A DNA stretch of 64,000 bases from Octopus bimaculoides (GCF_001194135.2 NC_068987.1:19343405-19407404); one strand, 5' to 3'. Shown: positions 8,480 through 43,146, counted from the stretch's first letter. A program made the numbers and translations. The notes: a model not told the origin generated them from the sequence alone.

Positions 8480-9430
8480 TTATAAGAAGAATTTACGCCT
8501 ACTAGTTTCCATTTCATGTCTTTTATGGAACCATTCGTACTCTCCGTAACGAGAGTCAAAGACTCCTTTCTGAAGGGATCTCATCTTCAGAGTGAAGCGA
8601 GGCCCAAGTTCTGCAAGTCCAACTCGTTTCTCATTTCTGAACACATAACGATGGTGTCTGAAAAATATGAAGTCTCTCTGGTTGTGGAACGTAACCACAC
8701 GCCGTCCGCGAAACTGTGGATCGAGTGGGAACAATGCACCCAACATACGTCCAACGGTGTGTCCCAAACGGGTGTTGAAATTGTTAAGTATCAACTCGGG
8801 TCTGTGTTCCGTGGGAGAATCACATTTACGTATTTCGTTTCGTAGTTTTACGTTACTCACTTTAAAATGAATGGTCGGTCCCTCTGGCAGGTGAATCAGT
8901 AGCATTCCATTAGGCTTTTTGTTGTTCTCGTTTACAATAATGATGTCGGTGAATTCTTTCTCGATCGCTTGAGGCACGATCTTCTTTATGGGTAAGGTTC
9001 TCCGGTGATAATAAGTCGCATTTGGAAAGACAGTTGCAAGTTCTTTACAAAAATGGTAAGTCCGTAGTTTGGATCGGCATGAAGTCGTGATCAATATTTT
9101 GGGTATTGTCTCGCGTTTGAAATGGGCTGCCATTTCATCCACAGATTCGTCTATTTCAACTTCTTCATCCTTCTGTGAGATGAGTGTTTCATCGGCCACT
9201 CGCAGTTTCTCAATAGTTTTCGGTTCTTGCTTTGGGGGAACGGGCAAGCCTTTCTTTATCCTCATCTTCCGCTCTTTCCTTTTAGCCATTTCGATCTTCT
9301 TTTTCTCTTGAAGCATTTTTCTAAACATCTGAGACCGTAAGATCTTATTCTTAACCCGTTTGTAATTGGGTACAGGGAGAACAGCTTCATTTTTGACCTC
9401 CGAAGGACCAGGAGTAGCTTTATCCGCCAT
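8480..9430 (-). CDS. RPF1: Ribosome production factor 1 (Brix domain, 60S biogenesis), single coding exon, 316 aa
   Basis: Intact ORF from ATG 9430 (MADKATPG...) with Lys-rich N-terminus, PKILITTS, FHNQRDFIFFRHHRY, sigma70-like ELGPRFTLK, and C-terminal EYEW...METSRRKFFL, all typical of Rpf1. Confidence 0.95.
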   Translation of the reverse strand: MADKATPGPSEVKNEAVLPVPNYKRVKNKILRSQMFRKMLQEKKKIEMAKRKERKMRIKKGLPVPPKQEPKTIEKLRVADETLISQKDEEVEIDESVDEMAAHFKRETIPKILITTSCRSKLRTYHFCKELATVFPNATYYHRRTLPIKKIVPQAIEKEFTDIIIVNENNKKPNGMLLIHLPEGPTIHFKVSNVKLRNEIRKCDSPTEHRPELILNNFNTRLGHTVGRMLGALFPLDPQFRGRRVVTFHNQRDFIFFRHHRYVFRNEKRVGLAELGPRFTLKMRSLQKGVFDSRYGEYEWFHKRHEMETSRRKFFL

Positions 9431-9441
9431 TATTATTTCCG

Positions 9442-9447
9442 CACGTG
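9442..9447. promoter_or_regulatory. Canonical E-box CACGTG 12 bp upstream of the RPF1 ATG
   Basis: gCACGTGg at 9441-9448 in a CpG-rich 5' region. Confidence 0.45.
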
Positions 9448-9815
9448 GCTGAAATGAGCAAAACGCAAGGGAGATCACTCAGTTTAATTCCACAATTCAA
9501 TCGGTGCTTATAAATCTTATTCCGTTAGGGCGAAACGAAATTTGATGTTGAGGGTAAAATCTCTCCTAAGCGAGAAAAGATTTTAGAAGCAATATATTCT
9601 AAGTTAATTTCCATAATATTTGAAAGTACAGTTTTGATTAACTGGCAGGATTTCAAAAGAATTTTTGGTTAATATAAAGATTGACTTCCGTTAACGCACA
9701 CACACGCAAAAAAAACAAAAAAACCCCAGCCTGCTAAGTATTAAAAACTGTGTAGAAAACTAATATGGCAAAACATTTTGCACAAACGAACGTGGGGTGG
9801 GTGGTGAGAGTACTT

Positions 9816-11340: not shown

Positions 11341-13074
11341 TTCCAGCACTGCTTCGAATAGCGGAAAACGCACCTGGGCCAAGGCATTGCTTCAAAAGAA
11401 TACTCTGAAGGCGGTAAAAGTGAAAACATGTAAAACTAAGTGAATAAAAATATTATTGCAAAATTCCGGTTTCTTTTGGGTACCCCCTCATAGAACCAAG
11501 AAACATGTGCTTCTTAATCACACAGCAGTACCTATATATCATCATCATCATCAGTTAGCATCTGCTTTCCATGGTAGCATGGACTGGACGGTTCCACAGG
11601 GACTGGCAAGTCAGAAGACTGCACCAATTTCTGTTGACTGCTTTGGTATGGTTTCTATGAGTGGATACCTTTCCTAATGCCAACAACTTTATAGAGTGTA
11701 CTGAATGCTTTTTACACAACACCAGTAGCAGTGAGGTCACCAAGTAACTCACAACTACTCAAAGACAATAATGGTTTCAAATTTTGGTACAAGACCAAAC
11801 AATCTTATGGGGAGTGGGTAGTCAATTACATCAACTGGTACTTATTTTATTGAACCCCAAAGATGGAAGGCAAAGTCAACCTTGGTGGAATTTGAAACTC
11901 AAAGATAACAATGCTACCTGCCTTCTAAAGGGTTGAAGAAGCAAACACATAGCAAAAACAAAATGATCTTGGCAAGATTTGAACCCATGAACTGTAAGAT
12001 ATTTTTAAGCCTCTGTCTTATAAATGATGATAATGATACAACCAAAGAAAGAAAACAAACAAGATTTTACAAAAGATTTTAGCAAAATTATTTTTATTTG
12101 AAATCACATAGAAAATATAAAAATATCACGGAGAAAATACACACACACACGTGTGTGTATGCCTGTATATATATATGTATATATATATATATGTATATAT
12201 GTGTGTGTGTGTGAGTGCATGTATATAATTTAAGCATGACTAATTATTAGTTTCAATGATTTCATCTCAATTGAAAAAGGCACATTGTTTTTATTGCATT
12301 CAGGTTAAATAACGAGCCATGAAAGTTTTAAAGTTTTTCATTTTAGAAAGGATAGTTTCAATGCTTTTTTACCGTTTCCATTTTCCCACTCTTTTGCTTT
12401 CAAGAATAGGTTGTTATTGAAATTCTTCTTCATACAGAAAGATTCAAATGGTTATAGATGACATTGCTGTTTAGTCCTAAACCAGCCCTGATTGAGCTGT
12501 CCTGTCACCAAAAGCAATCCAGCCATGCCTATCCAATTTTATTTTATATTCTAGATAAATTAGCCAACGTATTTTTAATTTTTAAAAAGTTTTTAAGCTG
12601 GTAGGAGATGATTTGAGGAAAATTTGACTGCTATTTTTAGTAGGTAGAATAATTGCACAAAGTTTCTTTCAATGGCTTGAAATTAACATAATTCTGATTC
12701 TAGGTACAATCCACATTCAGAGTTCATAAAATGAATGAACAATATTTATCTTTACAAATCAGATCACACATAATGTCTATACTGGTAAAACCAGCTCCAG
12801 TTAATATTTTTTTTTACAAGGCTTCGTTGGCAAAAACAATTTTGTACATTGACTCTCTCTCTTTCATCTCACACACACACACACACATGAATTTTACACT
12901 GAATAGTGTATGAGTATAGACAATGCCAAACTTAAAACAGTTTGGATATTTGCATTAAATCAGTAATACTTTAACATCTAGATATTTGTAACAAGCAGGG
13001 ATTCAACACCGTTTTTTCATATACATTAGCTCAATACTGTGCTATGTTTGACAGGCAACAATCCATATTAATAA

Positions 13075-13080
13075 TTTATT
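13075..13080 (-). terminator. Candidate AATAAA polyadenylation signal of the SDR gene
   Basis: tttatt on the plus strand, 75 nt past the stop codon; another candidate lies near 12093-12098. Confidence 0.35.
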
Positions 13081-13154
13081 TAAACAGTGAAACTTGAGGG
13101 AAGTTCAACATCTTATTTTCCATTTCATAGATTTCAGTGACCGCAGTACTGTTA

Positions 13155-14109
13155 TCACAGTTCTTCTTTTACAAATGGGTAGTCAATACCGTAGACTGCT
13201 CTGAGTCCAGTCAGAACTTGTAATGGCCGTCTTGTCAAATGTTTTTGCATCATATGAATAACATCCCGTCTTGGAATCTCATATTTTTCCTCTTTGATGG
13301 CCTTTTCATAAAAGGCTATTATTTCTTTCAGAATTTTCTCCCAACTTGTTGGTTTCCAGTTCAGTTTTTCTTTAGCTTTAGATACATCGACAGGGCCTAA
13401 CTTCACTGATGGGAAGAGATAAATAGAGCTTGAAGTCAGAGGTTCAATGAAAATATTCAAATCTGTTAGGTTAAGGGAATCCTTTATATCACTAAGGACT
13501 TCATACAGTGTTGGGGTTTCGTCAATGGCTAAATTGTAAGCTTCATTGTTAATGTCTTCACTACCTGTTAGATACTGCACAATTATATCTGCCACATCTT
13601 CAACATAAACTAAACTCATCTCTTGTTTAACTAAATTTGCAGGAAGTGACACAGGTCTTTCAAGATATGTGCGTATTTTCATCCACAACTGATAAAGCCA
13701 CCACCGGTAAGTGTTATCCTTGGGACCAATAACATCGGGAAGACGATATATTAGAAATGGTATTTTATCTGCTTCTGGTTGTTGCTGAAGTTCTTCTTCA
13801 CACTGAAGTTTCAAATGACCATAGTTGTCATTTTTGGCATAGTCCTCTCTCATGGTTTCAGCAAATGGACGAACTGCATCTGTCTCTTTGCTAGGTGCTG
13901 TGTGATTTTTCATGCACACATCATATACTGAATCTGTACTAATTAAAACATATAGACCAACTTTGGAACGGAAAATCGCCAGAACTTCTCTGACTGCAAA
14001 AGGATGATAGGCACTAAAATCAATGATTGCATCAAAATATATGGATGAGCTTGTTTTGAAGAAGTCGACCAAGTCTTGACAATTGTAAAGTGACTGCATA
14101 CGATCACAT
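13155..14109 (-). CDS. Extended/atypical SDR (NAD(P)-dependent epimerase/dehydratase-like), exon 2 of 2, ending in KEEL
   Basis: Acceptor ttcctttacag|A; encodes K-CDRMQSL...VLISTDSVY...YGHLK (YxxxK)...RLPDVIGP...LVYVEDVA...FVKEEL* with TGA at 13157-13155. Confidence 0.9.
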
Positions 14110-14329
14110 CTGTAAAGGAAGGAAATAAAAATATACATATATATATATTTATATTAGTGAAAACTTTTTTCAATAATCAATTATATTGTTTTGAAAGAAT
14201 TTAGTTACTTATTTTAATTTTATTTAAATTTATTTACTTCCAATGAATCTAATTTTATGCCCTCTTGAAGTGTGCTTATGTCATAGGTACAAACTAAAGG
14301 CCTTTGAGGTTTGTAGTTATATTGAAGTA

Positions 14330-14700
14330 TACAGGCAAAAGACAGGCATATCTGTAAAAATGTGATTGTGTTGGAAAACAAAGATCCCTTTGTATCAGTT
14401 TAGAGTTGAGTCTGTAAGGTGAAGATGTTTTCATGTTTGGTCAGAGTTGTGATGGTATTGAAAGTCATGAGAATAAGAACTCAAAGAAACAGTTGAGAAA
14501 GTGATTGAGTAATGAGAAGCATGGGTTTGGTTGTGCAAACAAAGCGGATAGAGGGAGTTGTTGTAGACATGATGAAAATGGATGACATCTGTATGTAATA
14601 TTCTGAAAGTCATTGAGGACTTCAATGATGTCAAAAGTGATTCCATTGATGGAAAATGTTGGTGACATTAAGTAGAATCCAAAAGAAAATGTTTAATAAA
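14330..14700 (-). mobile_element. Possible highly decayed CR1/L2-like RT C-terminal fragment
   Basis: SPTFSINGITFDIIEVLND resembles the F.ING..L..V...DLG segment; many stops. Confidence 0.3.
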
Positions 14701-16770
14701 CATACTATGCTCAAATTAGGAATCCACATGTTTTTGATTCAATCATTTCCAAAGAATTTTTTTTTTTTTTGTCAATATGATGTAAATTGAAAAATCAGCA
14801 CTTCCTTGCCAAGCATCATATGCATGTCTCTAATTTCTCACTGACACTAAGCTACAAATTTGTAGGGAAAGGGTATATTTATTTGAATAAACCAGGGTAC
14901 ATTATTATTAATTAATTATGATAATGAAGTAATGAAAAGTAAAATCAACCTCAGTGGAATTGAAACACAATATAAACAAAAAAAAAACTAAATGCTGTAA
15001 TGCATCCAATCTAGCATTTAACATATCCGTCACTCTTTTGCTTTTATCTACTCTGTTGTTTAGACTAAGGCTGCTCTGATCAAACAAACTAATGATCAAA
15101 GGTGTCCCAACTGTGACCATCCTGTCATTGTTTAGACAGTACATCTAGAACTACATTTAATGTACTTTTTCTCCTTTAAAGATAGTAAGGTGCAATTTGA
15201 AGGGTATTTGGCTACTATTTCTAGTTGGTAGAATGACTGCATAGAGATCCCCACACTGGCCTGTTATTTAGGGTGAGGGTTAAAGCTACGAAATGAAAGA
15301 ACCAGAAATGGTTCTAACAACAATGAAAATACTACAGGACAAGTAGATAGCTAGAACAAACAATTCCTTCCCATATACTTGTCTACAACCCTGGTGTCCC
15401 AGTGACCACAACACATTTTCTCCCTCTCAGACAAATAACTAGGTTCTGCACTCTTCACAGCAACTGGATTTATCAAACTTTCCTGTAGGAGTAAACATCT
15501 ACTCCATTGGCATGCAGAAGAAGTAGGCAGTAACGTTTTCAAAAGGTACTTTTCTATTATTGACAGCCAATTTTTATTTTTATCTACTAAAGGATTAGTA
15601 AATAAATCATACTTCTGAGACGGGTATAATAGTTGATTGGTGAACTTTCACAATAGCTATCACTACATCTTGGAAATGGAAAACTATTACACCTATCTCA
15701 CAAGTGTATTAGTTTCTTTACTAATCCTACAGTAAATAAAAAGTTGGCTCTATATTATTATAGGAAAGTATCTTTAAAAATATATCTCCACTGAGACATA
15801 TTTTCAGAGAAAGGTCTTTCATGGACAAGTCCTGACCTCCAGTTTTTTGTCACAAAACTTATGTACTAAGGGACAAGAAGATAATAGCAGGTAATACAGG
15901 ACAATCTAAGGTGTAATACAGTACATTTTATCTATTTAGCACAATGGTAATTTAGAATACTAACACAAAACCATTTTTCTGCCATGGCCTGTGATATTTC
16001 TTGGTACCATCTGTAGCTCACCCACTGTCAACACTAAATATCAAAAATCAATATTCAAACATAAATTTAGTTCACGTTATAAGAAAATATTAAAAAAATA
16101 CAAATATTTGAAAGATACAAATATCAAAGAGAAAAAAAAACAAAAAAATTAAAGTGTGATTGTTATCGATATGCATACAATTTTTCCTAAATATACTTGT
16201 GTTAGTGACCTATAAAAATTGGTTCATGACCCACTTCTAGGACATATGGTCCAGCTTGTGTGTTTACAGGTTTAGAGAACAGGGAACAAGTTAATGTGTG
16301 ATATCTATGCTTAAAACAGAAAAAATTGTATCAATGGTTAAGTTTACTGACTTTGTTCAATTATATAAACTAAAACAAACCAAGAAAGTCTCTACATATT
16401 CATTCAATCTGTTGGAAATAGGAGCCAAATGTTCCCTGAATCACACCTTTCTGCCTGAAAAGGGGAGAGACATATTGGATGAAATACTTCTGGATATTCT
16501 AAGTCTGAGACGAAGAAAAGAAAGAAAAAAGAAAAAGAAAGACAGGATTTCACAGCTGGGAAATCTTTTATCATAAGATGAGAGATGGTGTTAAAGAACA
16601 GTTTAAACCAAAAGGGATGAAATAGGATTTAAATGAAATGTAAAATTATCATTCCAATTTCTTTTTTAACCAGTCAGTCAGGGAAGGGACAGTGCCCATA
16701 ACAAATGCAGAACCTCCCAGACGTGATACTACTCTGGTTGAGGGCCCTTATCTGTAAGTCAGCGTCTGAT

Positions 16771-17065
16771 GTTGTTGTTGTTGGCACTCCATCGCTTACG
16801 ACATCGAGGGTTCCAGTTGATCTGATCAACGGAACAGCCTGCTCGTGAAATTAACGTGCAAGTGGCTGAGCACTCCACAGACACGTGTACCCTTAACATA
16901 GTTCTCGGTGATATTCAGCGTGACACAGTGTGACAAGGCTGACCCTTTGAGTTACAGGCACAACAGAAACAGGAAGTAAGAGTGAGAGAAAGTTGTGGTG
17001 GAAGAGTACAGCAGGGTTCGCCACCATCCCCTGCCGGAGCTTCGTGGAGCTTTAGGTGTTTTCAC
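16771..17065 (-). mobile_element. SINE family A, cut by N-gap
   Basis: Matches the family A body and AAC tail. Confidence 0.85.
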
Positions 17066-17775
17066 NNNNNNNNNNNNNNNNNNNNNNNNNNNNNNNNNNN
17101 NNNNNNNNNNNNNNNNNNNNNNNNNNNNNNNNNNNNNNNNNNNNNNNNNNNNNNNNNNNNNNNNNNNNNNNNNNNNNNNNNNNNNNNNNNNNNNNNNNNN
17201 NNNNNNNNNNNNNNNNNNNNNNNNNNNNNNNNNNNNNNNNNNNNNNNNNNNNNNNNNNNNNNNNNNNNNNNNNNNNNNNNNNNNNNNNNNNNNNNNNNNN
17301 NNNNNNNNNNNNATATATATAGTGAGAGATGATGAAGAGCAGATGTTATTTCCTTTTTCTGGTATTTCCTGTCACTTCTTCCATCTTTCCTACACAACCC
17401 CACTTCCTGCCAGTGTACTTTCACAATCTCTGTTATAAAATTACTACTTGGCATTATTAGGGAGCCTTTTCACAGTCGCTCGACCTACTAGAAATAGCAG
17501 CCAAACATCCCTCAATTACACCTTATTGCAGTTGGGTCCCAACTTGGTTCCTTGGGCTTCTCTACTCAACTCCTAGGAGAAGTAATTTAGAATTAGAATG
17601 AGTTTAACAAGACGAAGAAGCATGATGGTGTGATGTTTGAAGGAGAATCTGAGAGTCGAGAGGCCACCCTTATTCTGGCTGACAGTGCACAGGGATTTTA
17701 CATCAATGGCATCAAAACTAGGCCTCAATTTTGCCAATTTATTTGTTGGCCATGCTGAAGCTCAAATTTTCAACC

Positions 17776-18100
17776 CAGGGCCAAACTAAGACCCACTGAT
17801 GCCCTAACCACTTAAAAGATTTTGGTGCCCTCATATGTATGTAATTCAAAATATAAACAATAATAAACTATAAAATAAATTTTTATTTTTCAAAATGAAA
17901 AAAAAACTAACAGTAAAATGGAAAATAATGTTTATTTTTGAATACTTCCACTTTATTTATATTTCAAAAGTCTTCTTCTGTTCTTTTTAATAGCAAAGTC
18001 TTTGATCAGATCCTCAGAATTAATCTTACACAATACATTTACTTTTATACTTAGTAGAGATAAGGCATCCCAAATATTAATTTAACAAGTTTAAAGTGAT
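17776..18100 (-). mobile_element. hAT transposon 3' end remnant
   Basis: Translation DALSLLSIKVNVLCKINSEDLIKDFAIKKNRRRLLK* resembles the tail of the hAT dimerisation domain; terminus reads CAGGGCC... at 17776. Confidence 0.7.
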
Positions 18101-19231
18101 TTCTTTTATGCTGTAAACCATTTACCATTTCTGTACCATTTCTTCCCCTAATGCCTTTGCTCAATGGTTAATCTGGCACATGGGTCAACCCTTGACCTAC
18201 ATGGTTGTTACATCAATGACTCTATGAATACCATCTTATATAAGAGAGAGCAACTGATACTTTTCATGTTCCCCATCAATAATCTTCATACACCACTTCA
18301 ATACTTCTATCAACTACTTTGTCATTTCTCTATCAGTTAATGACTCCTACCTCTCCACATTGATCTTCTATAAATCTACAGACTTTCCTAACCCAACTTT
18401 TTTTCCTAACATCACACTCACAGCAAGTCTACCATCCCCTTCTCACAATTCTTTCTTATCCATTTCATCTACAGCAGAAGTCTTGACTTCATTTCCAAGT
18501 CAAATGAATGCATAATTTTTCTTCTCGCATGGATCAAATGTTGTGGATACTGCTATCCACTGAACCCAATTTATCAGTTTTACTACTTCACTCACTCTCC
18601 AGGAATCCAGACCCTGCCCTATCACTTTCACTCTGTGACACAGCCATTTCTGTACGCTCTTCTTCCAATGTCCACTTCTTTCTGCTATCTGACCCTGAAA
18701 CCGCTTCTCTCATTTTTGAAAACTTCACTCTGACTCATCCTGGCATATCCATATACTCCCTGCTTCAATGTCTTATTGTCCCTTCAGCTCCCATACTCTA
18801 CTAGTATAATGTCAATATGATCAACCACTTTGACTACACCTCCCCTAACTTATACTGCATAAGAGAAACAGGTTGCTGTTCAGAAGATAGGTTCCATAAA
18901 CATTTGCTGGGGGTCTGTAACAATGACCAGGGAGTTGTCAAACTCAGAGCTTTCTAATTTGATTTGCCTGGTTACTCCTCTGACCATCTCTCAGTCTATA
19001 CACAAACACAGGGTACAACTTTCCTAAACCATAGCAATTGCTTTCCTACAGTTTTAATATACATCTCAACTTACTCTAATTCTGCTCTTTTAAACTGCTT
19101 ACATTGCTATGTGATGTCTATTTGCATACATTGTGGTTTGCTTATGCATGTCTGTATGTTTATGTATTGTCTAGTTATATATATTGCATATAACATGATG
19201 CACACACTGCTTCTATGACTGTACACATTAT

Positions 19232-19585
19232 TCTTTTACTCTTTTACTTGTTTCTGTCATTTGACTGTGGCCATGCTGGAGCACCGCCTTTAGTCGAGCA
19301 AATCGACCCCAGGACTTATTCTTTGTAAGCCTAGTACTTATTCTATCGGTCTCTTTTTGCCGAACAGCTAAGTTACGGGGACGTAAACACACTAGCATTG
19401 GTTGTCAGGCGATGGTGGGGGGACAAACACAGACACACAAACATATATATATATATACATATATACGACGGGCTTCTTTCAGTTTCCGTCTACCAAATCC
19501 ACTCACAAGGCTTTGGTCGGCCTGAGGCTATAGTAGAAGACACTTGCCCAAGGTGCCACGCAGTGGGACTGAACCCGGAACCTAT
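19232..19585 (-). mobile_element. SINE family B (5'-truncated)
   Basis: Reverse-complement match to family B. Confidence 0.85.
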
Positions 19586-19748
19586 GTGTAACATATTTGC
19601 AGTGCCTAGCATTATTGTACTCTTTATAATTTCCACTCTCTGCTCCCTTCCCACTTCTTGCCAACGACTACAATAGATTTCTGCCCTTCCTGTCTCTGGA
19701 CATTATTGCCTTAATAATTCAGACCATTCTTTATTATTATTAGGGTAG

Positions 19749-19780
<32 letters not shown>

Positions 19781-20282
19781 CTCTATTAGTCATACATAGG
19801 GCTCAATACATTTATATACAGAAGCCTACAAGCATGCATATATATTGGGCTGTACAATATACAATCAAACGGGACAGTACATTTTTCGAGGAGTATTTAA
19901 ATATTTAAATGGTAGTTTTCGTTTGTCTTTAACTAATTTATAGCCTCTCAGTTTTTTGAAACATTTCGAGAGAGTTGGACTGCTGCCAAGAAAGTTTGTG
20001 ACTTGGTTTGTGTCCCGCTATGTTGAAATACTAGACGATAGTCACCCCTAGTGTTATGTACAATTGAGGAAATATGCAAGCCTCTATTTTGTTTGTTTAT
20101 TTACTCACTGTTGTATTTTTTACACCCACGCTTTCTTTTCGCCATTTTTCTCTTGAAAATTGTCTTATTTTTTTCCCCGCTGAACTATCTGTTGTTCTTA
20201 GGAAATTTGATAATAATATTCTCAAATGTAACCCCCCCCCCCAATTTCTCTCTTCACGACAAAATTGAAACTAAAAACTTAC

Positions 20283-20536
20283 TTGAGATGTCGAACATAC
20301 GGTTTAATCAAAACATTTGAGTCCCAATACCAGTTGCCGCGGTTAATTATAGTGATGGAATGGTCGGTCTTCAAGAGCCGAGACACGGTAGCAGAACCGA
20401 TAAAACCGTTTCCACCGAACACCAAAATTGACAACCGTCTATTTTCATGAGAAGCAGAATCTACCAAGGTTGTGGACAGTACAAAAATAATACTGGGTAC
20501 TACGGTTAAAACGACAAATAATCTCAGAGAAGTCAT
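20283..20536 (-). CDS. SDR exon 1 of 2: signal-peptide-like leader plus Rossmann GGNGFIG motif
   Basis: ATG 20536: MTSLRLFVVLTVVPSIIFVLSTTLVDSASHENRRLSILVFGGNGFIGSATVSRLLK..INRG; donor AA|gtaagt (phase 2) joins exon 2; 254+955 nt = 402 aa + stop. Confidence 0.9.
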
Positions 20537-20931
20537 CGTTGCAACTTTTGCTGAGCTTTGTAAAAGATGTTGATGCTGTGTCAAGTATGAGGGGGGATAA
20601 CTCTATAGTTTGCCTTACCGTCGAGGGGAACAGCCAAATGGAAGAGTGGGGAAGACACAAGAATCTCAGCTATGTCAACAAAGATATAAAGTTATTTCTT
20701 CGGAAAATGGTCCTACTTAAGAAGTCAAAACTCATGTGGCTTCCAGACATGATAATTTATTCATCGTCATGAACGTCACAAAAAGATTTCAAAGAAGAAA
20801 CATTTAATTGTTCTTCAGCTTTACGCTTTTATACCTTTTTTAAAAATTTGTTATTGTTTCTTTTCATATTAATATATATTATATCGTTTTCAGTCTGTCA
20901 TGGCTTACCAGCTTTACAAGGACGCTTTAGA

Positions 20932-21304
20932 TTGTTGTTGGCACTCCGTCGCTAACGACGTCGAGGGTTCCAGTTGATCCGATCAACGGAACAGCCTGCT
21001 CGTGAAATTAACGTGCAAGTGGCTGAACATTTCACAGACACGTGTACCCATAACGTAGTTCTCGGGGGATGTTCAGCGTGACACAGTGTGACAAGGCTGA
21101 CCCTTTGAATTACAGGTACAACAGAAACAGGAAGTAACAGTGAGAGAAAGTTGTGGTGAAAGATTACAGCAGGGTTCGTCACCATCTTCTGCCGGAGCCT
21201 TGTGGAGCTTTAGGTGTTTTTGCTCAATAAACACTCACAACGCCCGGTTTGGGAATCGAAACCGCGAGTCCGCTGCCCTAACCACTGGGCCATTGCGCCT
21301 CCAC
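20932..21304 (-). mobile_element. SINE family A with 11-bp target-site duplication
   Basis: acgctttagat at 20922-20932 and 21306-21316. Confidence 0.9.
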
Positions 21305-21789
21305 AACGCTTTAGATATTAAATAAATAAATAAACAGCTATTTTAAAGGATTATATTACAAGGGAAATAACTTGTTAGAGACATGAAAAATGCTTAGTTT
21401 TAAAAGAAAGGAGAATTGCACTCCATCGGAAAAAGTTCTATGTGGTCGTTCGGCTTGGTAGAAATAACAACCAAATCTTCACCGGCTGAGTAAAAGAGAG
21501 AAAAAATAGTCACTCTTGGGATACACTAAAGACTGGGTGGTGACTTGATCTTTAATCAGCTTGGGTAATGGAACATCTCTCAAACCCATTCCCAGAAAGC
21601 AGGACATTGCGTATATTGTTATAATGTGCCATAGCAAAAATTTTCCATCGACATCTTGCAACCGTTACCTTGATGATTTTGTTCCAATAGTCTGCCAGGC
21701 ACCACTCTACAACAGATCTTATGTGGACGAGCCAACCAGCTCAACACAAATGAACAAGCAACTCCACAACAGATCTTTTCCAACGCAGC

Positions 21790-22290
21790 TTCCCACCATT
21801 TGTTGCTATCTTTTGTCATCTCCTTCATGATCTTGAGATCAGCTTTTACCACTTCTGCCCATGTCTTCTTTTTCCACATTTTCAATTCATTAGGACATCC
21901 TGGCACTTCTTTACCCATCTGTTCCATATGTTGTATGTCCATACCAAGGCAATATATCATCATCCTTAAACATCTGTTCTTCATACTGGCATGCGTTGGA
22001 CGGTTTGACAGGAGTTAGCCAGTTGGAGGATTGCCCTGGGCTCCATTCGTCTGTTTTGGCATGGTTTCTATGACTGGATGCCCTTCCTAATGCCAACCAC
22101 TTTATGGAATGTACTAGGGGCTTTTACCTGGTATCTGCACAGGCACTTTTACATGGCACCAGTATGCACAAGCCCGCAAGTCTAAGATCTTTAAGCTGAG
22201 ACAGGGATGTAGAGGACATGCTTGTATGCATGGACAGCCACGATTCTACTTAGCTTAGCATTTCTTCTCAAGCACAGCAAATGGCCAGAA
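21790..22290 (-). mobile_element. RTE-type LINE fragments (RT C-terminus plus a 3'-UTR/GAT-tail copy)
   Basis: PWYGH and KKTWAEVVKADL motifs; adjacent ggaagggcatccag...catcatc tail unit. Confidence 0.6.
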
Positions 22291-22950: not shown

Positions 22951-23464
22951 TATGAAGTCACTTGGAATGGTTCCAGAAGATATAGAAACCCTCGCCTCAG
23001 ATCGAGTTGGATGGCGAACAAAAGTGTGGAATGGAATGAAAGCGTTTGAAGAGACCAGGATAACGCAAGCAAGACTCAAAAGATATTTAAGGAAGAATGT
23101 AAAGATCGAGAAGGTAAATGACAAGGACCTTTTTGTGTGCTCAGTCTGTGACAGACCATGCCTGTCCTCAAATCTCAGCTGCGAACCCATGGAAAACAAA
23201 CTTCAACCAATTATTCTGACTATATGTCTGTGCACACGTTTGAATGTGGTGTGTGCCAGAGGGCTTGCAAATCCAATGGGGGTCTTAAAAGACATGTTAG
23301 GATCCACAATGAGCAGAACTTACCTGCAAGTATTGGTAGTTCAAATCAGAGGTGCAATCTGTGTGGGTGTTTTTTTCAGAACATTGTCTGGTTTAAAAAG
23401 CCACATCAGATGCCATGAAAGGGCTAAGGTGTAGGTACAGGAGGTGGTCAAACTCTATGCAAGG
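22951..23464 (+). mobile_element. RTE-type LINE 3' end encoding three C-terminal C2H2 zinc fingers (frameshifted)
   Basis: LASDRVGWRTKVWNGMKAFEE (RTE ..DR..WR....G...FE), then FVCSVCDRPCLS/LKSQLRTH, FECGVCQRACKSNGGLKRHVRIH, QRCNLCGCF/FRTLSGLKSHIRCH. Confidence 0.8.
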
Positions 23465-32401: not shown

Positions 32402-33708
32402 CTACAAACAAACACATTTTAGATCAACATTTTTCAAAAGCCACAGTATGGCCATTGGGCCTGGTAGAAATATTAACCGAATTCCCTTCCAATCATATCC
32501 TACTGTCTAATGTAAAGTAAAAATACACTGGATCATGTAGCCCTACATGTAGGTAGACTAATATCATTTAATATCTACCGAGACCTTTGGCAATATACCA
32601 TGTTTTGAGAAGACCTGTCAAGCCAAGTGAGATCGTAGTTATGGCCAATGCTGGTGTTTCATGACTGGCACCTACTACTCTCTTGGAGTGGTTGGCGTTA
32701 GGAAGGGTATTCAGCCATAGAAACTATGCCAAATCAGGCTGAAACCTGGTGCAGCTTCCCAGCTTACCATCGAACCCATGCCAGCATAGAAAACGGATGC
32801 TTTTCTGTGCTTGCATGGATTGGATGGAGTTTATTGACACATTTTCTACAGGCAGGTGTCCTGATGCCCTTCCTGTCACTAACTCTCATGTTTCCAAGCA
32901 AGGTTACTATTTCCCCTTCACCAGGCAGTTTTTAGCAGAATATTAGAAATGAATGACATTTATTTATATGTCAAGACATGAAGATACAAACATACTCACA
33001 GCCACACACATACATACGATAGGCTTCTTTCAGATTCTGCTTACCAAATCCACTCACAAGGCTTCGATCAACCTGGAGCTCTTGCAGGGCCCAATACACT
33101 TGCCCAAAGTGTCACACAGAGGGTCTGAACCTGGAACCATGTGGTTGAGAAGCAGATTTCTTTGCCACACACCCATACCTACACCTACTACCTGAAGTGG
33201 GCGAAACAAACAAAAAACCAGATGGAAAAGTTATGGTTAGAACACCTTTGATAATAAGTCTTCTGGTACAAAAGGTAAAGCTACCTTCTTGAGTCATAGC
33301 GGCTCATAAGGGCAGGTTTCCTAATTTCACTGGTCTGTTGCAGGATTATTCATTTTTGCCAGTTGAGTGGACTGGAGCAATGTGAAATGAAGTGTTTTGC
33401 TCAAGAACACAACGCGTTACTTGGTCCAGGAATTGAAACCACAATCTTACGATCATGAGTCCAACACCCCAACCACTAAGTCACATGCTTCCACTATAGG
33501 TCTTCTGGACACCATAGGGTAGATGTGGGGGTTAAACAAAGTCAGTAATGGAACACTGAGAGCAGTATAGGGAGATAAGTGGAAAATTTGTGTGTGTGAG
33601 AGAGAGAGAGATATAAGAGAAAGAAATGAGAAAGAAAAAGAGGAAGAGATAGATGGATAGATAAATAGATAGAGAGAGGTCAAAAGATCAAGCAGCAGAA
33701 TTACTTAC

Positions 33709-34572
33709 CCATTAAGGTATATATTTATGACAGATTTTGACTTTGGTGGTGAGCGAGCTGGTTTGGCTGGGACATCTATGTTGAGGCCAGTTGGTGAGGA
33801 GACATTTAAAAGGACGGTATCGGAGGGCAAGGTAACATTGTCTTTCGTTGGCGTTGATGGTGATAGGGGACAAGCACTGGTTTTAGCTAAAGACACAGTG
33901 ATAGGCTGTTTGTCGTGGACAGTGCCGAACACATCGCTAAGATTTGAAAATGTGGTGTAGATGGAATGATGGTGATCGTCTTTTGTGTCGACAACGTCCA
34001 TCCACGCAGTATTGCTAGTTACAGAACCATCAGTATCTTGGCTGCTGCCAACGATGACCAGTTTGGTGCCAAACTCTTTGGCAAGTGAGTCCATAATCTC
34101 ATTGAAGTCTTTCATGCCTGATATTTTTTTATGACTTTTAAAATGCTTGTTGATTGAGATGAACATTTTGCTTGTCTGGCCTTCTTTCACCTGCTCTTCC
34201 TCTTCTTTTTCCTTTTCGGTTACAACTGGCACAGAATTATTTTGATCAAAATTATCTTCCTGCTTTTTACTTTGCTGCTGACTTGTGGGGGAATCACTAG
34301 AAATTAGCGACTGGCCAAAACCAGAAACATTTTTGTTGCTGTCAACGGTAAACATGTTCTTGAGTGATTTTATTGACTCAATGGTTTTCTGTGAAGTGAT
34401 GTTTTCAGTTACATGAAGAGCCTCCAGACTGCGGTGAACATTGAATGTTAAGAACTGGTTTTGGAGGTAGGTCTCGAACTTCTCAAGCCCTTCAGGTTTA
34501 GAAATATCAGTGTAAATACCCAAAAAGTCCCAATATTCTCGCCACCCGAATTTGTATTTTTGAGCAAGTTGT
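33709..34572 (-). CDS. ANKLE2: ANKLE2 large exon (R-QLAQKYKFGWREYWDFLG...IYLNG)
   Basis: tttctttccacag| and GG|gtaagt, 864 nt open; conserved W.EYW.FL motif followed by a Ser/Thr-rich linker. Confidence 0.93.
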
Positions 34573-36708
34573 CTGTGGAAAGAAAAAGAATGACACAAAA
34601 ATTTTTTTTTTTTTAAAAGTGATTAAACACTTAAATTCATAATTATTATCAGAAAAATATAATTCAATAAACAAGAGTTATAGAAAAAATAAAATAATAC
34701 TAGTAAAGATAAACTGAACTACAAAACCTCATCTCTGCCACTCCATTCAATGCCAAATCATGCAAAGGGTATGTAAACGACCGTGTGAAGTGAGGTGACG
34801 AGAATGGCTCCTTTGCACATCACATGGTCGATACAATAAATATGAAAAGAATAAATGCCAGAAGGAAAAGAGAGACACAAACGGGGTACAATGTTTAAGA
34901 GAAGATTTTATTTATATGTCAACATGTGTGTGCATCATATATACATAATAATAGACAGGCCATCATGAGAACAAAGTGTGTGTGTACAATTTGAAAAATA
35001 GGGCAGATTCCCCCCCCCCCCCACTTATTTTGTGATTTAGGTGGGATTTTTGAAAAACAAGGAATTCACGGCAGTGTTCAGCGAACAAATTAAACACTAC
35101 CTGGCAGTGGCTAAAAGACAAACTGATCAAGTTTATGTATAAATTTTCTTTTTATATGTTCGTTTCCATTTACACAATATTAAAACAATGGCTAAAAATT
35201 TTCTGAAGCAGCACCCCCGCCACTAATTTTATCTACAAGCTGCCACTGCTCCTCAGTATAATAATTAAAAGGGTTGAAGCCAGATGAATATGGAGACTAT
35301 TGTGTCCAGTAACTTCTTATGCAAATCAATAAGAGAGCTTGTATGTGCTGGCCTAAATTGCAAGAAATAGCAGCCAAATCCTCAAACCACACTACTAAGA
35401 TTAAAAAGAAAAAAAAAACAAAAAACAAGACATATTGAATACTATAGTTCTGAACAAACAAAGACATGTTGGCCATGGTTAGAATGTCTTTGATCACAGA
35501 GCTGTTGAATTAGGATGTACTTGAGCTAACAACAATCACCAGCCGCAGTAGGACCACTACCACAACCGCCTTATAATTTTGTCTTTTGACAATTAAAATA
35601 ATAAAAACGTTTCATATGCTTTTGTCTAATGAATTATAATTACTGTATTTACATTGTTCAATGGTCAGTGTTCCCCTTTTGAAAGACAACAGTATTAATT
35701 GAAGGAAATCCGGCTGTTATTTCTAGCAAGTCAAGCAACCAAATAAATGCCCCCTCACTGGTTTGTGCAAAAACTCTGCGTATATTAAGAAGTGTTTGAG
35801 TGCACAAACTTCTCTATTAACCACTGAAATCATCGAAAGAGCATTACTAAAAACTTTCTGTTCATATAGTATCTATGTAACAAGATGGCACTGTGAAGCA
35901 TATTTCACTTCAAATAAGCTACACAAAACAAAGGATTTAAAATTACTGCTGCAAGCTAATTAATTAGTATTCTCTCCTACTGCTCACAGTGGTGAGCAGT
36001 ACCAAGCAATTTAATTAATTTACATCTAAGTAAGCTGAGCCATTTAAGAGTGCAGCGTCTTGACAACAGACAACATGACCTATCACATCAGTAATAACGA
36101 AAGAGGAATCCAACAATAGCATAATAGATAAGAATGTGGCTATGTGGTAAAGAAGCTACCCTTCGCATCTGTGGTGTTCCAGCTTTGGCATTTGCTCCCT
36201 AATCGAAACTTGATTCGTTCTTTGCCATAGCTTCATATTGCTTATGTGTTCAGACCATCTGATTTTAAGTATACTACGCAAGCACCTGTTGATGAATGAT
36301 TGTATTTGCTTATTTGACTCAACTGTTGTTCGCTATGTCTCAGCCCCATACAATAACACCACTTTTACGCTAGTCTTAAAAATTCTTATTTTGTTCTTTG
36401 TTGAAATTACACTTGCGCTCCATACTTTTTTCTAGTACTGTGGGAGGAAATATTACCTTACTTGGAAGCAGGTAAGGGTTGGCTGGAAGATAACTAGGGT
36501 GTAGCCAATTTGCCTCGATACACTGTCCAACCCACGCAAGCATTGGAAAGTGGACATTTAAAACAACAATGATGATATATATATATATATATACACACAC
36601 ACATACATACACACATTCATATAAGATATAAGTAGCAAGAAAGAGAGAGAGAGAGATAAGGAGAGGGAGAGTGAGAGACAGAAAAAGTAGATGAAAAAAG
36701 ATAGTTAC

Positions 36709-40823: not shown

Positions 40824-41069
40824 CACAACGGGGTATGTGAGAAGCAATAAGATAGGGTGAGTCAAGACACTGAAGGCAATATCTGTCAATCATTGTGGAA
40901 AGGATTGAGAGGCCCCATCATATAACATCCCAAAGAAATACCAATGATGATCCATAGAACTGGAAGGACTTTGCAAGCCAACCCCTGGACACAGGGTGGG
41001 CACCTGGCTAGTAATGAGATTTGTATTTAGATATATAAGGAATATAAAGGGTAAACAGACAATACAAAC

Positions 41070-41255
41070 CCCTTTGTCTGGTGTGTTAAGGTAGTAATCT
41101 ATTAGACGCTCTGTTCTATCACATATACTATCATCATTGATACCATACAATTTGCAGAAGAAATTTGGATCCTGGATGACTTCGAGGATTATTTTGATAA
41201 TCTCAGGCTTATTCATTTTGGCAGCGATATGAAAAGCGTTGTAACGGGCACCCAC
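41070..41255 (-). CDS. ANKLE2: ANKLE2 exon (VGARYNAFHIAAK...YLNTPDKG)
   Basis: ctatttcag| and GGG|gtttgt, 186 nt; conserved G.RYN..H.AA and YLNTPDK motifs. Confidence 0.95.
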
Positions 41256-42896
41256 CTGAAATAGAGAAAAAAAAACAAGCAAGAATTACAATCAGATGAA
41301 TTATCTAGGGAATAAGGAGTTATTTAGTGCCTGATTTCAAGAGTTCTGACACAGTGGAGGGAGAAGAAGGGGGGAAACATTAATTGTAGATCCGTTTCTT
41401 CTTTATATGTTCACAACATTTCAATCAATATGTCCTTCATATGATATGAACAATGATGATATCCAAAGCATTTAATAACGATATCAACATTGATAATGAC
41501 AATGACATTTTTCATCATCATCATTTGCTATTCTTATACCTAGTCGGCAAGTGAAAATATCGGCAAGACATCTGCCCATTCCCTGCTCCCAAAACCACCC
41601 TTTCTTTAAATTTTTTTTTTTTCGGCACAAACCCCACTTTTCGGCTACAGGGAATACAAATCTACAAAAAAATTGACATTTCTAAATTACCCCCCACCCC
41701 CATTTCTTTCATTTTGAACTTTTTCAAAATATGCAGAAAAATACAGAGATTNNNNNNNNNNNNNNNNNNNNNNNNNNNNNNNNNNNNNNNNNNNNNNNNN
41801 NNNNNNNNNNNNNNNNNNNNNNNNNNNNNNNNNNNNNNNNNNNNNNNNNNNNNNNNNNNNNNNNNNNNNNNNNNNNNNNNNNNNNNNNNNNNNNNNNNNN
41901 NNNNNNNNNNNNNNNNNNNNNNNNNNNNNNNNNNNNNNNNNNNNNNNNNNNNNNNNNNNNNNNNNNNNNNNNNNNNNNNNNNNNNNNNNNNNNNNNNNNN
42001 NNNNNNNNNNNNNNNNNNNNNNNNNNNNNNNNNNNNNNNNNNNNNNNNNNNNNNNNNNNNNNNNNNNNNNNNNNNNNNNNNNNNNNNNNNNNNNNNNNNN
42101 NNNNNNNNNNNNNNNNNNNNNNNNNNNNNNNNNNNNNNNNNNNNNNNNNNNNNNNNNNNNNNNNNNNNNNNNNNNNNNNTCCAAAATATCTTCACAGAAA
42201 ACAGCTTCAGGAGTAGTGAAGAAAAAATTTGTATGTAGTCTGTTTCTGAGAACTATTCTATTGGACCTCTGTCTAATCACGTCTTTTAAGGTACACACAC
42301 ATACATAGTAAATGTGAGTTCATGGTAGAACATTTTTACAATAGTTGATTTATGGAAAAGATTATGTTAAATTTTTGAAATGCAAATCTGTGAATGAAAA
42401 TTAAGTTCAGACCTCTACATGGTAGGTAGACCTGGTAGAAATAGCAGCCAAATCTCCCTCAAAACACCCTACTGTATTAATGCGACAATTCTGCGTATTA
42501 TGTAGTTTAAATGAGAAACTGTAACTAAAGATGAAGATAATTAACCCCACAAAGAGGTGAAAGAAGAGAGAGACAGCATAGCAAAAGTTTTGGCTGACTG
42601 TCATCCTGTAGTCCCCTTGTTGCTGTGTGAGCAACTAGTTGTCTTAATGGCGGAACAAAGGAGGGAATTGCATTAGAAAAAGTTTTAATCGGTTTTCTCG
42701 GAAAAAAATAGAAGAGGCATTAAGAAGTTGACGTTAAGAATTGCTTTAANNNNNNNNNNNNNNNNNNNNNNNNNNNNNNNNNNNNNNNNNNNNNNNNNNN
42801 NNNNNNNNNNNNNNNNNNNNNNNNNNNNNNNNNNNNNNNNNNNNNNNNNAACCATGTGGTTGGTAAGCAAGCTACTTACCACACAGCCGCTCCTGC

Positions 42897-43084: not shown

Positions 43085-43146
43085 GGAAACAACAACATGG
43101 AGAATTCGTTTCCAAAAAAAATAAATGAGTTGTAACTGCTGCTTAC

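What the first reader, a model, noticed from the sequence alone, without database searches (positions are those of the whole stretch)
13155..20536. Probable ER-lumenal extended SDR: signal peptide plus KEEL on an epimerase/CSP41-like fold
Seen: splicing two ORFs that the track lists separately gives a 402-aa protein. It has a ~28-aa hydrophobic leader, GGNGFIG, INRG after beta-2, ISTDSVY, YGHLK, two N-glycosylation sequons (NHT, NLT) and terminal KEEL followed by double stops. Established: extended SDRs (nucleotide-sugar epimerases/dehydratases and the atypical subgroup that includes chloroplast CSP41) are mostly cytosolic or plastidial. KEEL is a recognised KDEL-type retrieval variant, and a basic residue after beta-2 usually indicates NADP(H). 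Inference: this is a soluble ER-resident oxidoreductase drawing on the lumenal NADP(H) pool, with unknown substrate (nucleotide sugar, glycan or steroid/xenobiotic). I know of no characterised animal counterpart.
Basis: partly seen in the sequence, partly recalled or inferred. Interest (0 to 1): 0.72.

Follow-up and report, generated by a model that had tools for sequence, protein, structure and literature searches.

The report
ER-retained SDR oxidoreductase gene, octopus
A two-exon octopus gene encodes an enzyme of the sugar-epimerase fold with a secretion leader and an ER-retention tail; relatives from a diatom and corals to amphioxus keep both, which points to an unstudied redox enzyme inside the endoplasmic reticulum that did not turn up in vertebrates, insects or nematodes.

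Summary
Exon 1 (20536-20283) and exon 2 (14109-13155), on the minus strand, splice GT..AG in frame to a 402-aa protein ending KEEL, then TGA and TAA. Three RNA assemblies and 21 raw reads join 14109 directly to 20283. The N gap (17066-17312) lies in the intron, next to a SINE-like repeat.

The protein is an extended SDR: Pfam Epimerase E 1.7e-16, AlphaFold pLDDT 91, best folds GalE and RmlB. It keeps an intact Ser142/Tyr181/Lys185 triad, and Asn65-Arg66 replaces the NAD-specifying Asp.

In the main orthologue clade, 119 of 134 proteins end in [KRHQSA][DENQ]EL and 118 have a hydrophobic leader (median h-region 12 aa). The clade spans molluscs, annelids, brachiopods, hemichordates, amphioxus, cnidarians and arthropods; a diatom clade has both features too. 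Leaderless paralogues in annelids and rotifers have no such tail (0 of 41) and have lost the Cys86/Cys95 pair. That pair is present in 172 of 176 tail-bearing sequences, which suggests a lumenal disulfide.

No curated family or paper describes the protein. The database names "UDP-glucose 4-epimerase" and "CSP41b" fail their defining tests. It is most likely a soluble ER-lumenal NADP(H)-dependent oxidoreductase. The substrate is unknown and is probably not a classical nucleotide sugar.

The parts
20283..20536 (-). Exon 1 coding part: Met1 to the first two bases of codon 85. It encodes the leader, beta1-GGNGFIG and beta2-NRG.
   Evidence: RNA contigs of X1, X7 and X8 cover it and join it to 14109.
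20450..20536 (-). Signal-peptide-like leader, residues 1-29. It has an n-region with Arg5, a hydrophobic core Leu6-Leu20 containing Pro14, and a polar c-region ending Ser27-Ala28-Ser29.
   Evidence: Hydropathy profile. AlphaFold pLDDT is below 50 for residues 1-29. Leaders are present in 118 of 134 orthologues with a median h-region of 12 aa.
20396..20416 (-). Gly-rich dinucleotide-binding motif GGNGFIG (residues 41-47).
   Evidence: G41, G42, N43 and G47 are invariant in 67 of 67 sequences.
20336..20344 (-). Asn65-Arg66-Gly67 at the end of beta-2. This is the position where NAD-dependent GalE enzymes carry Asp.
   Evidence: Arg66 is invariant in all clades. In the profile alignment, 'tivNRG' lies opposite 'VIVVD' of structure 4zrm. 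The cofactor rule is from PMC2792337.
14110..20282 (-). Single intron of 6173 nt, GT..AG. It contains the assembly gap and repeats that are heavily represented in RNA.
17066..17312 (.). Assembly gap (N run), intronic. It abuts a SINE-like repeat copy at 16775-17062.
   Evidence: The spliced RNA skips it.
13155..14109 (-). Exon 2 coding part: the third base of codon 85 through Leu402 plus the TGA stop.
   Evidence: Raw-read loose ends at 14109 read into exon 1.
14079..14108 (-). Cys86...Cys95 loop (CDRMQSLYNC), a candidate lumenal disulfide. Asp87 and Arg88 belong to the conserved CDR motif.
   Evidence: The pair is present in 172 of 176 sequences with an ER-type tail and absent from 55 of 66 without one. 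Cys86 is replaced in the leaderless annelid-like and rotifer clades.
13809..13940 (-). Catalytic triad region: Ser142 (13940-13938), Tyr181 (13823-13821), Lys185 (13811-13809).
   Evidence: These residues are invariant or nearly so in every clade. They align with the Y-x-x-x-K of GalE structures.
13158..13169 (-). C-terminal KEEL (residues 399-402), a KDEL-type ER-retrieval signal.
   Evidence: 119 of 134 orthologues match [KRHQSA][DENQ]EL. The last residues have low pLDDT, so the tail is probably exposed. A KEEL protein was shown to be ER-localised in PMC2140024.
13152..13157 (-). Tandem stop codons TGA TAA.
12800..13154 (-). The part of the 3' UTR that was examined. Transcript contigs run on past 12800.
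   Evidence: section 8: contig pieces reach 12800 and the records extend 35 to about 616 nt further.
20537..20800 (-). The part of the 5' UTR that was examined. The X1 contig continues 161 nt past 20800; the X7 and X8 contigs end at 20582 and 20572.
   Evidence: section 8. An in-frame stop lies 24 codons upstream of the ATG.

Best explanation
The gene encodes a soluble, ER-lumen-resident enzyme of the extended short-chain dehydrogenase/reductase (SDR) fold.

Proposed mechanism:
1. The N-terminal leader takes the nascent chain into the ER and is probably cleaved between residues 23 and 29.
2. The roughly 370-residue two-domain body folds in the lumen, probably with a Cys86-Cys95 disulfide.
3. 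The flexible C-terminal KEEL is read by the KDEL receptor, which returns escaped molecules from the Golgi.
4. Chemistry is the usual SDR hydride transfer, with Tyr181 as acid/base, Lys185 lowering its pKa and Ser142 holding the substrate oxygen. The cofactor is exchangeable NADP(H) (Asn65-Arg66 in place of the NAD-binding Asp).
5. The enzyme therefore acts as a ketoreductase or dehydrogenase on a lumenal carbonyl or hydroxyl compound.

Shown here: the gene structure, its expression, the fold, the conserved triad, and the conservation and co-variation of leader, tail and Cys pair.

Inferred: leader cleavage, the disulfide, ER residence, NADP(H) preference and catalytic activity.

Unknown: the substrate. 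It is probably not a classical NDP-sugar, because the NDP-clamping residues of GalE are not matched.
For: - Gene model and splicing.
- Fold: Pfam Epimerase at 60.8 bits against a cut-off of 20.9. AlphaFold mean pLDDT 91.1, pTM 0.87. Foldseek top hits are GalE and RmlB, with TM 0.6-0.8.
- Catalytic residues: S142, Y181 and K185 are invariant or nearly so, and R66 invariant, in all clades.
- Cofactor: Asp is replaced by Asn-Arg after beta-2; the rule is in PMC2792337.
- ER signals: 112 of the 120 best hits end in [DE]EL. 119 of 134 main-clade sequences match the PROSITE-type pattern, against 0 of 41 in the leaderless clades.
- Named species: tail and leader are present in amphioxus, hemichordates, Limulus, a scorpion, crustaceans, myriapods, a nemertean, a brachiopod, anthozoans, hydrozoans and a diatom.
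- Leader type: median h-region 12 aa, typical of cleaved signal peptides.
- Oxidising compartment: the Cys86/Cys95 pair tracks the ER tail (172/4 against 11/55). ER-type proteins have about 4 Cys on average, leaderless ones 8-18.
- KEEL is a working ER signal in human FOXRED2 (PMC2140024).
Against: - No dedicated signal-peptide predictor was available. In the octopus protein the uncharged stretch is 20 residues long, so an uncleaved signal anchor (a type II membrane protein with a lumenal body) is not excluded for this species.
- Localisation, cofactor binding and activity are untested.
- The two N-glycosylation sequons are not conserved.
- No ERSE-type stress element lies upstream of the gene.
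- Some SDR-fold proteins with an intact triad have no demonstrated catalytic activity (CC3/TIP30; PMC2792337).
Confidence: 0.65

Rival explanations
1. It is a lumenal nucleotide-sugar 4-epimerase or 4,6-dehydratase, for example a UDP-glucose 4-epimerase that makes UDP-Gal inside the ER, as the automatic names of the Acropora and Elysia orthologues imply.
For: The best sequence and fold matches are GalE and RmlB enzymes. The S/Y/K triad is intact. Two orthologues are named 'UDP-glucose 4-epimerase' by their sources.
Against: - The NCBIfam GalE equivalog scores 27.6 bits against a cut-off of 262.3, and no member of the family passes any equivalog cut-off.
- The Asp that holds tightly bound NAD+ is replaced by Asn-Arg.
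- The Asn of the R-Y-x-N-V-Y-G-P motif is an invariant Asp210.
- In the profile alignment to 4zrm, the positions of the two Arg residues that clamp the diphosphate in GalE-type enzymes are variable or fall in an insertion. The mapping of those Arg residues rests on my knowledge of E. coli GalE, not on a test here.
- Identity to any solved NDP-sugar enzyme is 14-21%.
Confidence: 0.12
2. It is a type II membrane protein. The leader is an uncleaved signal anchor, the catalytic body faces the lumen, and KEEL adds retrieval.
For: In the octopus protein the uncharged run is 20 residues. 13 of 126 orthologues have runs of 20 residues or more. Some human transmembrane proteins carry lumenal KDEL variants (PMC2140024).
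Against: - The median h-region is 12 aa, and leaders vary freely in sequence and length.
- A polar c-region with small residues follows the hydrophobic core.
- The core contains a proline at position 14.
Confidence: 0.12
3. It is a non-catalytic NADP(H)-binding protein, that is, a lumenal redox sensor, chaperone or RNA/ligand binder in the manner of CSP41, NmrA, HSCARG or TIP30.
For: NCBI names the Aplysia and Centruroides orthologues after CSP41b. SDR scaffolds with sensor roles exist, and TIP30 keeps the triad without known activity (PMC2792337).
Against: Besides the triad, a whole set of pocket residues is invariant from the outgroup to octopus: D210, D216, R220, S250, N277, P318 and G323. 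This is the pattern expected of a conserved active site. CSP41 is described as lacking the classical active-site residues. No RNA substrate is expected in the ER lumen.
Confidence: 0.08
4. It is an annotation or assembly artefact, or algal or bacterial contamination misread as an octopus gene.
For: Some orthologues are named 'chloroplastic', and the region holds an assembly gap.
Against: - The gene has a spliceosomal intron and is transcribed and spliced in many octopus RNA runs.
- Orthologues of 95% and 78% identity lie on chromosome-scale contigs of Octopus sinensis and Argonauta hians.
- The scan of 185,579 prokaryotic genomes found no close relative.
Confidence: 0.01

Closest known systems
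UDP-glucose 4-epimerase (GalE) and dTDP-glucose 4,6-dehydratase (RmlB): extended SDRs, Pfam PF01370
   Same: Both have the two-domain extended SDR fold, a Gly-rich motif, the S...YxxxK triad and an R-x-x-[ND]-V-x-G-P-R segment. These enzymes are the best sequence and structure matches.
   Different: - Identity is only 14-21%.
- Asn-Arg replaces the NAD-binding Asp, and Asp210 replaces the conserved Asn.
- The NDP-clamping Arg positions are not matched.
- This family has an extra, confidently modelled C-terminal helical extension of about 50 residues (helices at 341-391).
- It has a signal peptide and a KDEL-type tail, whereas GalE and RmlB are cytosolic.
CSP41a/b (chloroplast stem-loop binding protein of 41 kDa; atypical SDR)
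   Same: It belongs to the same epimerase-like superfamily. NCBI's pipeline names two orthologues after it. From memory, not tested here, CSP41 shares the 'NRG' motif after beta-2.
   Different: CSP41 is plastidial, binds and cleaves RNA, and is described as lacking the classical SDR active-site residues (PMC2792337). This family is in animals and a diatom, carries ER signals and keeps the full triad.
11beta-HSD1 with H6PD (the known NADPH-linked redox pair of the vertebrate ER lumen)
   Same: The concept is the same: an SDR whose active site faces the ER lumen and would depend on the lumenal pyridine-nucleotide pool.
   Different: From my own knowledge, 11beta-HSD1 is a classical (not extended) SDR held by an N-terminal membrane anchor and is a vertebrate enzyme. 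This protein is an extended SDR, is predicted to be soluble and retrieved through KDEL, and was not found in vertebrates.
FOXRED2 (ER-lumenal flavoprotein ending in KEEL)
   Same: It is a soluble oxidoreductase-fold protein kept in the ER by the same KEEL tetrapeptide (PMC2140024).
   Different: It has an FAD-dependent fold and is unrelated in sequence.
UXS1 (UDP-glucuronate decarboxylase)
   Same: It is an extended SDR whose catalytic domain lies in the lumen of the secretory pathway. It gives weak N-terminal sequence matches.
   Different: From my own knowledge, UXS1 is a type II membrane protein of the Golgi that uses NAD+ and has no KDEL signal. The matches here are restricted to the Rossmann N-terminus.

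Membership tests
Extended SDR (Pfam PF01370, NAD-dependent epimerase/dehydratase) | The profile match exceeds Pfam's gathering score. | tested here: met
   60.8 bits against a cut-off of 20.9, residues 37-279 against model positions 1-240 of 240.
Extended SDR (Pfam PF01370, NAD-dependent epimerase/dehydratase) | N-terminal Gly-rich dinucleotide-binding motif (GxxGxxG). | tested here: met
   GGNGFIG at 41-47. G41, G42 and G47 are invariant in 67 of 67 sequences.
Extended SDR (Pfam PF01370, NAD-dependent epimerase/dehydratase) | Catalytic Ser/Thr ... Tyr-x-x-x-Lys. | tested here: met
   S142, Y181 and K185 are conserved in every clade and align with the YxxxK of GalE structures.
Extended SDR (Pfam PF01370, NAD-dependent epimerase/dehydratase) | Two-domain fold: a Rossmann domain plus a C-terminal substrate domain. 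| tested here: met
   AlphaFold pLDDT 91.1. Foldseek TM 0.6-0.8 to GalE and RmlB over 340-390 columns.
UDP-glucose 4-epimerase GalE (the name given to the Acropora and Elysia orthologues) | NCBIfam equivalog TIGR01179 at or above its cut-off. | tested here: not met
   27.6 bits against 262.3 for the octopus protein. 57 of 67 members match, but only weakly (best E 1.9e-11).
UDP-glucose 4-epimerase GalE (the name given to the Acropora and Elysia orthologues) | An acidic residue after beta-2 that holds non-exchanging NAD+. | tested here: not met
   Asn65-Arg66 lies opposite the Asp of 'VIVVD' in 4zrm, and Arg66 is invariant.
UDP-glucose 4-epimerase GalE (the name given to the Acropora and Elysia orthologues) | UDP-binding residues (Asn179, Arg231 and Arg292 in E. 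coli numbering; recalled from memory). | tested here: inconclusive
   In the profile alignment to 4zrm, the Asn is an invariant Asp210 and the two Arg positions fall on variable or inserted residues. No ligand-bound model was made.
CSP41 (the name given to the Aplysia and Centruroides orthologues) | Plastid targeting and plastid residence. | tested here: not met
   The hosts are animals. The N-terminus is a signal-peptide-like leader and the C-terminus is KEEL/KDEL.
CSP41 (the name given to the Aplysia and Centruroides orthologues) | Loss of the classical SDR active-site residues (PMC2792337). | tested here: not met
   The triad is fully conserved. The literature statement was read.
CSP41 (the name given to the Aplysia and Centruroides orthologues) | Closest sequence relationship to plant or cyanobacterial CSP41. 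| not tested
Soluble ER residents retrieved by the KDEL receptor | C-terminal tetrapeptide of the type [KRHQSA][DENQ]EL (PROSITE-type pattern, recalled from memory). | tested here: met
   KEEL in octopus. 119 of 134 main-clade orthologues match. KEEL is ER-localising in PMC2140024.
Soluble ER residents retrieved by the KDEL receptor | A cleavable N-terminal signal peptide. | tested here: inconclusive
   Only heuristics were available. The hydrophobic core is Leu6-Leu20, and Ser27-Ala28-Ser29 fits the -3/-1 rule. The median h-region is 12 aa across 126 orthologues. SignalP was not available.
Soluble ER residents retrieved by the KDEL receptor | The signals are conserved in orthologues and absent from non-ER paralogues. 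| tested here: met
   The pattern is matched by 119 of 134 main-clade sequences against 0 of 41 in the leaderless clades. The Cys86/Cys95 pair co-varies with the tail.
Soluble ER residents retrieved by the KDEL receptor | Experimental ER localisation that depends on the tail. | not testable with these tools
   This needs a tagged protein expressed with and without KEEL.

The most novel reading that the evidence does not exclude
The family is an ancient eukaryotic, soluble, ER-lumenal, NADPH-consuming reductase, shared by a diatom, cnidarians, lophotrochozoans, non-insect arthropods, hemichordates and amphioxus. It acts on a substrate that is not a nucleotide sugar. Vertebrates, insects and nematodes have lost it, which would explain why cell biology built on model organisms has never met it. 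If so, the lumenal NADPH pool has a widespread, conserved client other than 11beta-HSD1, and there is an ER-lumenal redox step still to be discovered.
Probability: 0.35. Interest if true: 0.7.

Novelty: new variant of a known kind. Interest (0 to 1): 0.55.

Why it matters
Very few enzymes are known to use pyridine nucleotides inside the ER lumen. In vertebrates the field rests essentially on H6PD feeding 11beta-HSD1. This family is a soluble, KDEL-retrieved, extended SDR that has probably switched to NADP(H) and is conserved across most animal phyla sampled and in a diatom. It would be a second, much older type of lumenal redox enzyme, and its substrate would define an unknown ER pathway (glycan, lipid/sterol or xenobiotic).

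The family also offers a clean natural experiment. Leaderless paralogues in annelids and rotifers have lost the tail and the Cys pair together.

On the practical side, the work corrects misleading database names ('UDP-glucose 4-epimerase', 'chloroplast stem-loop binding protein 41 kDa b, chloroplastic') that are now attached to animal proteins.

Tried and rejected
- Missing exon or frame break at the N gap: rejected. Spliced RNA joins 14109 to 20283 directly.
- Membership of a curated bacterial or archaeal enzyme family: no NCBIfam model is near its cut-off, either for the octopus protein or for 67 family members.
- Bacterial origin or operon context as a clue to the substrate: the pattern scan of GTDB genomes gave only generic matches of 28% identity or less. 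The one 53% exon-like piece lies on a 4.4-kb 'Metamycoplasmataceae' MAG contig and is probably host contamination. This gave no usable context.
- Literature: five full-text searches, including orthologue identifiers, found no description of the family.
- Conserved N-glycosylation as support for lumenal exposure: rejected. The sequons at 153 and 298 are present in only 39 and 31 of 134 orthologues, and the number of sequons does not differ between ER-type and leaderless clades.
- ER-stress element (CCAAT-N9-CCACG) upstream of the gene: none found. The single window match lies at 1286 and is within chance expectation.
- Structured RNA or tRNA in the intron to explain the very high RNA depth: no Rfam or ARAGORN hit. 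The depth comes from dispersed repeats.
- Taxon of the unnamed hits: two look-ups of encoding contigs and the third cluster look-up yielded no organism names. An earlier cluster look-up named only a Ridgeia member of the leaderless clade and a diatom.

Full report
**1. The observation**

On the minus strand an ATG at 20536 opens a 254-nt exon that ends ...CGA CAT CTC AA|gtaagt (donor GT at 20282-20281). An acceptor ...cctttacag| precedes 14109, from where an open frame runs to CTG TGA TAA (Leu402; stops at 13157-13155 and 13154-13152).

Joining the two exons gives 1209 nt, which is 402 aa plus a stop. The ATG is the first in frame after a stop 24 codons upstream.

**2. The gap and the junction**

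The N run at 17066-17312 lies inside the 6.17-kb intron. It directly follows a repeat copy (16775-17062) that recurs at 20932-21220 with 92-93% identity. It is therefore an ordinary repeat-induced gap.

Assembled transcripts from three RNA runs of three different studies contain 12800-14109 joined without any intervening base to 20283-20800 (X1; the X7 and X8 contigs end at 20582 and 20572), with 0 mismatches (section 8). In the raw reads of three further runs, 4, 8 and 9 reads that end at 14109 continue with TTGAGATGTCGAACATACGGTTTAATCAAA. This is the reverse complement of the last 30 bases of exon 1. Depth falls to about 0.3 beyond 14109.

The Octopus sinensis gene model LOC115213970 is also 402 aa and is 95% identical over its full length. 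The two-exon model is therefore established.

**3. What the protein is**

- Pfam Epimerase (PF01370) matches end to end at E 1.7e-16.
- A model built with a 67-sequence alignment has mean pLDDT 91.1. Only residues 1-29 and the last residues are of low confidence.
- Its best structural neighbours are UDP-glucose 4-epimerases and dTDP-glucose 4,6-dehydratases, with TM 0.6-0.8 and 14-21% identity.
- Ser142, Tyr181 and Lys185 align with the catalytic residues of those enzymes. They are invariant or nearly so in all the sequences I compared.
- At the end of beta-2, where GalE has the Asp that binds the adenosine ribose of NAD+, the family has Asn65-Arg66, and the Arg is invariant.
- The published rule is that an acidic residue there specifies NAD(H) and a basic residue in that loop specifies NADP(H) (PMC2792337).

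The protein therefore looks like an active, NADP(H)-using SDR rather than an epimerase or dehydratase with a captive NAD+.

**4. The ER signals are conserved**

Of the 120 best database hits, 100 end in DEL and 12 in EEL. The residue at position -4 is mostly K, R, H or, in corals, S.

I clustered 242 near-full-length relatives.

| Clade | Members | Leader | C-terminal tail |
|---|---|---|---|
| Main clade (molluscs, annelids, brachiopod, hemichordates, amphioxus, anthozoans) | 134 | 118 have one | 119 match [KRHQSA][DENQ]EL |
| Hydrozoan clade, and a clade that includes the diatom Extubocellulus spinifer | 6 + 20 | almost all | almost all have a DEL/EEL-type tail; 19 of 26 match the strict pattern |
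| Leaderless clades (one with a Ridgeia protein, another of unknown taxon, plus an outgroup) | 41 | none | 0 match |

Named species that carry both signals include Branchiostoma, Saccoglossus, Ptychodera, Limulus, Centruroides, Artemia, Amphibalanus, Strigamia, Lineus, Lingula, Nematostella, Hydractinia, Hydra and Acropora. The uncharged, hydrophobic core of the leaders has a median length of 12 residues (interquartile range 10-15). That is the length of a signal peptide, not of a membrane anchor. KEEL itself keeps human FOXRED2 in the ER (PMC2140024).

**5. An independent line of evidence: cysteines**

Cys86 and Cys95 close a ten-residue loop (CDRMQSLYNC) between beta-3 and the next helix. 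Both are present in 172 of 176 sequences with an ER-type tail and are missing in 55 of 66 without one.

They have been replaced in the leaderless annelid-like clade and, separately, in the leaderless rotifer proteins, where the positions hold Ile and Val/Ala/Leu. ER-type members have about 4 cysteines in total, whereas leaderless ones have 8-18.

This is the pattern expected if the pair forms a disulfide in an oxidising compartment. The count is not corrected for shared ancestry, and I could not measure the distance in the model.

**6. What it probably does not do**

No NCBIfam equivalog is approached. GalE scores 27.6 bits against a cut-off of 262.3, and the result is the same for 67 family members.

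In the profile alignment to Thermotoga GalE, three things differ:
- The Asn of R-Y-x-N-V-Y-G-P is an invariant Asp210.
- The Arg of the G-D-G-x-x-x-R-D-Y motif falls on a variable residue next to an invariant Ser250.
- The R-x-G-D segment is replaced by a family-specific insertion (Y-L-Y-P-S-V-x-x-G-P).

From my knowledge of E. coli GalE, those are the residues that hold the UDP diphosphate. A classical NDP-sugar substrate is therefore less likely, though not excluded.

CSP41, after which NCBI names two orthologues, is plastidial and is described as lacking the SDR active-site residues. This family differs on both counts.

**7. Distribution and novelty**

In the best 120 hits of each of three searches (queries: octopus, a leaderless paralogue, Saccoglossus), amphioxus is the only chordate. 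No vertebrate, insect, nematode, echinoderm or tunicate name appears. Weaker unlisted hits cannot be excluded.

An exhaustive search of 1.84 billion representatives found 165 clusters at E of 1e-30 or better. A pattern-based scan of prokaryotic genomes found no close relative. Every named member is 'uncharacterized', 'hypothetical' or carries a transferred name, and no paper in the library mentions the family or its identifiers.

The fold and the retrieval signal are both well known. The combination is not described: a soluble, KDEL-retrieved, probably NADP(H)-dependent extended SDR conserved from a diatom to amphioxus. I rate it a new variant of a known kind.

**8. Verdict**

Open points:
- cleavage of the leader (a signal anchor is possible for the octopus protein, whose uncharged run is 20 residues);
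- actual localisation;
- cofactor;
- above all, the substrate.

Interest is moderate to good (0.55). The finding is a coherent, testable prediction of an unstudied ER-lumenal redox enzyme that model organisms seem to lack, but it gives no functional handle yet.

Noticed in passing
window 16775-17062 and 20932-21220: Two direct copies (92-93% identical) of a SINE-like element. One abuts the intronic N gap and the other lies just upstream of the gene's 5' end. RNA depth over the intronic copy is enormous (up to about 2.8e5 in contig word depth), which reflects dispersed copies elsewhere in the genome. ARAGORN and Rfam find nothing.
   Followed up: partly
window 19208-20008: A second intronic repeat has very high RNA depth (up to about 3.8e5) and many variant positions. 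ORF text sharing '...GDKHRHTNIY...' recurs at 56578-56931 and 59586-59993, so it is another dispersed, transcribed repeat family.
   Followed up: no
window 8480-9478 (-): An uninterrupted 332-aa ORF has a Brix domain (PF04427, E 1e-32). It is probably a single-exon gene for an RPF1/IMP4-type ribosome-biogenesis factor, next to the SDR gene on the same strand.
   Followed up: partly
window 33705-34598, 40890-41282, 43081-43431 (-): Three long minus-strand ORFs look like exons of a larger gene. One has a weak ankyrin-repeat hit (Ank_3, E 0.0017, below the cut-off); the others have no Pfam match.
   Followed up: partly
window 21619-21984, 22952-23434, 47913-48644, 51641-52033: These ORFs resemble the C-terminal parts of retrotransposon ORF2 proteins (my reading of the sequence). 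Pfam gave no hit for the two that were tested. Several are interrupted by N gaps.
   Followed up: partly
L003 2987-3214 (CBDHHR010000198.1, 'Metamycoplasmataceae bacterium' MAG, 4.4-kb contig): An exon-sized stretch is 53% identical to residues 39-116 of the octopus protein. It is far closer than any true prokaryotic match, so it is most likely animal host DNA binned into a bacterial MAG.
   Followed up: no
Proteins P0432/P0217 (Ridgeia and relatives), P0220-type cluster; L001 6001-7098, L002 6001-7113: These leaderless paralogues without a KDEL tail are encoded as single uninterrupted ORFs in eukaryote-like contigs, with retrotransposon genes nearby. Ridgeia has both this type and the ER type (P0083). 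They could be retrogene-derived cytosolic copies.
   Followed up: partly
Proteins P0345, P0347-P0350 (Rotaria, Adineta): The rotifer members lack the leader and both Cys86 and Cys95. They end in KHNEM, HNDEI or KHSDM, which look like decayed [KH][DN]EL tails. This suggests a secondary move out of the ER.
   Followed up: no
Proteins P0092 and P0190 (Lingula anatina LOC106173432 / LOC106173431): The two paralogues have consecutive locus numbers and the same longest-contig length (343,943), so they are probably a tandem pair. One has a leader and KDEL. The other has no leader and ends ...APQDE, which may be a truncated model.
   Followed up: no
Database names of orthologues (P0135 Acropora cervicornis, P0055 Elysia marginata, P0019 Aplysia, P0461 Centruroides): The automatically transferred names 'UDP-glucose 4-epimerase' and 'chloroplast stem-loop binding protein of 41 kDa b, chloroplastic' are not supported by the defining features tested here.
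   Followed up: yes
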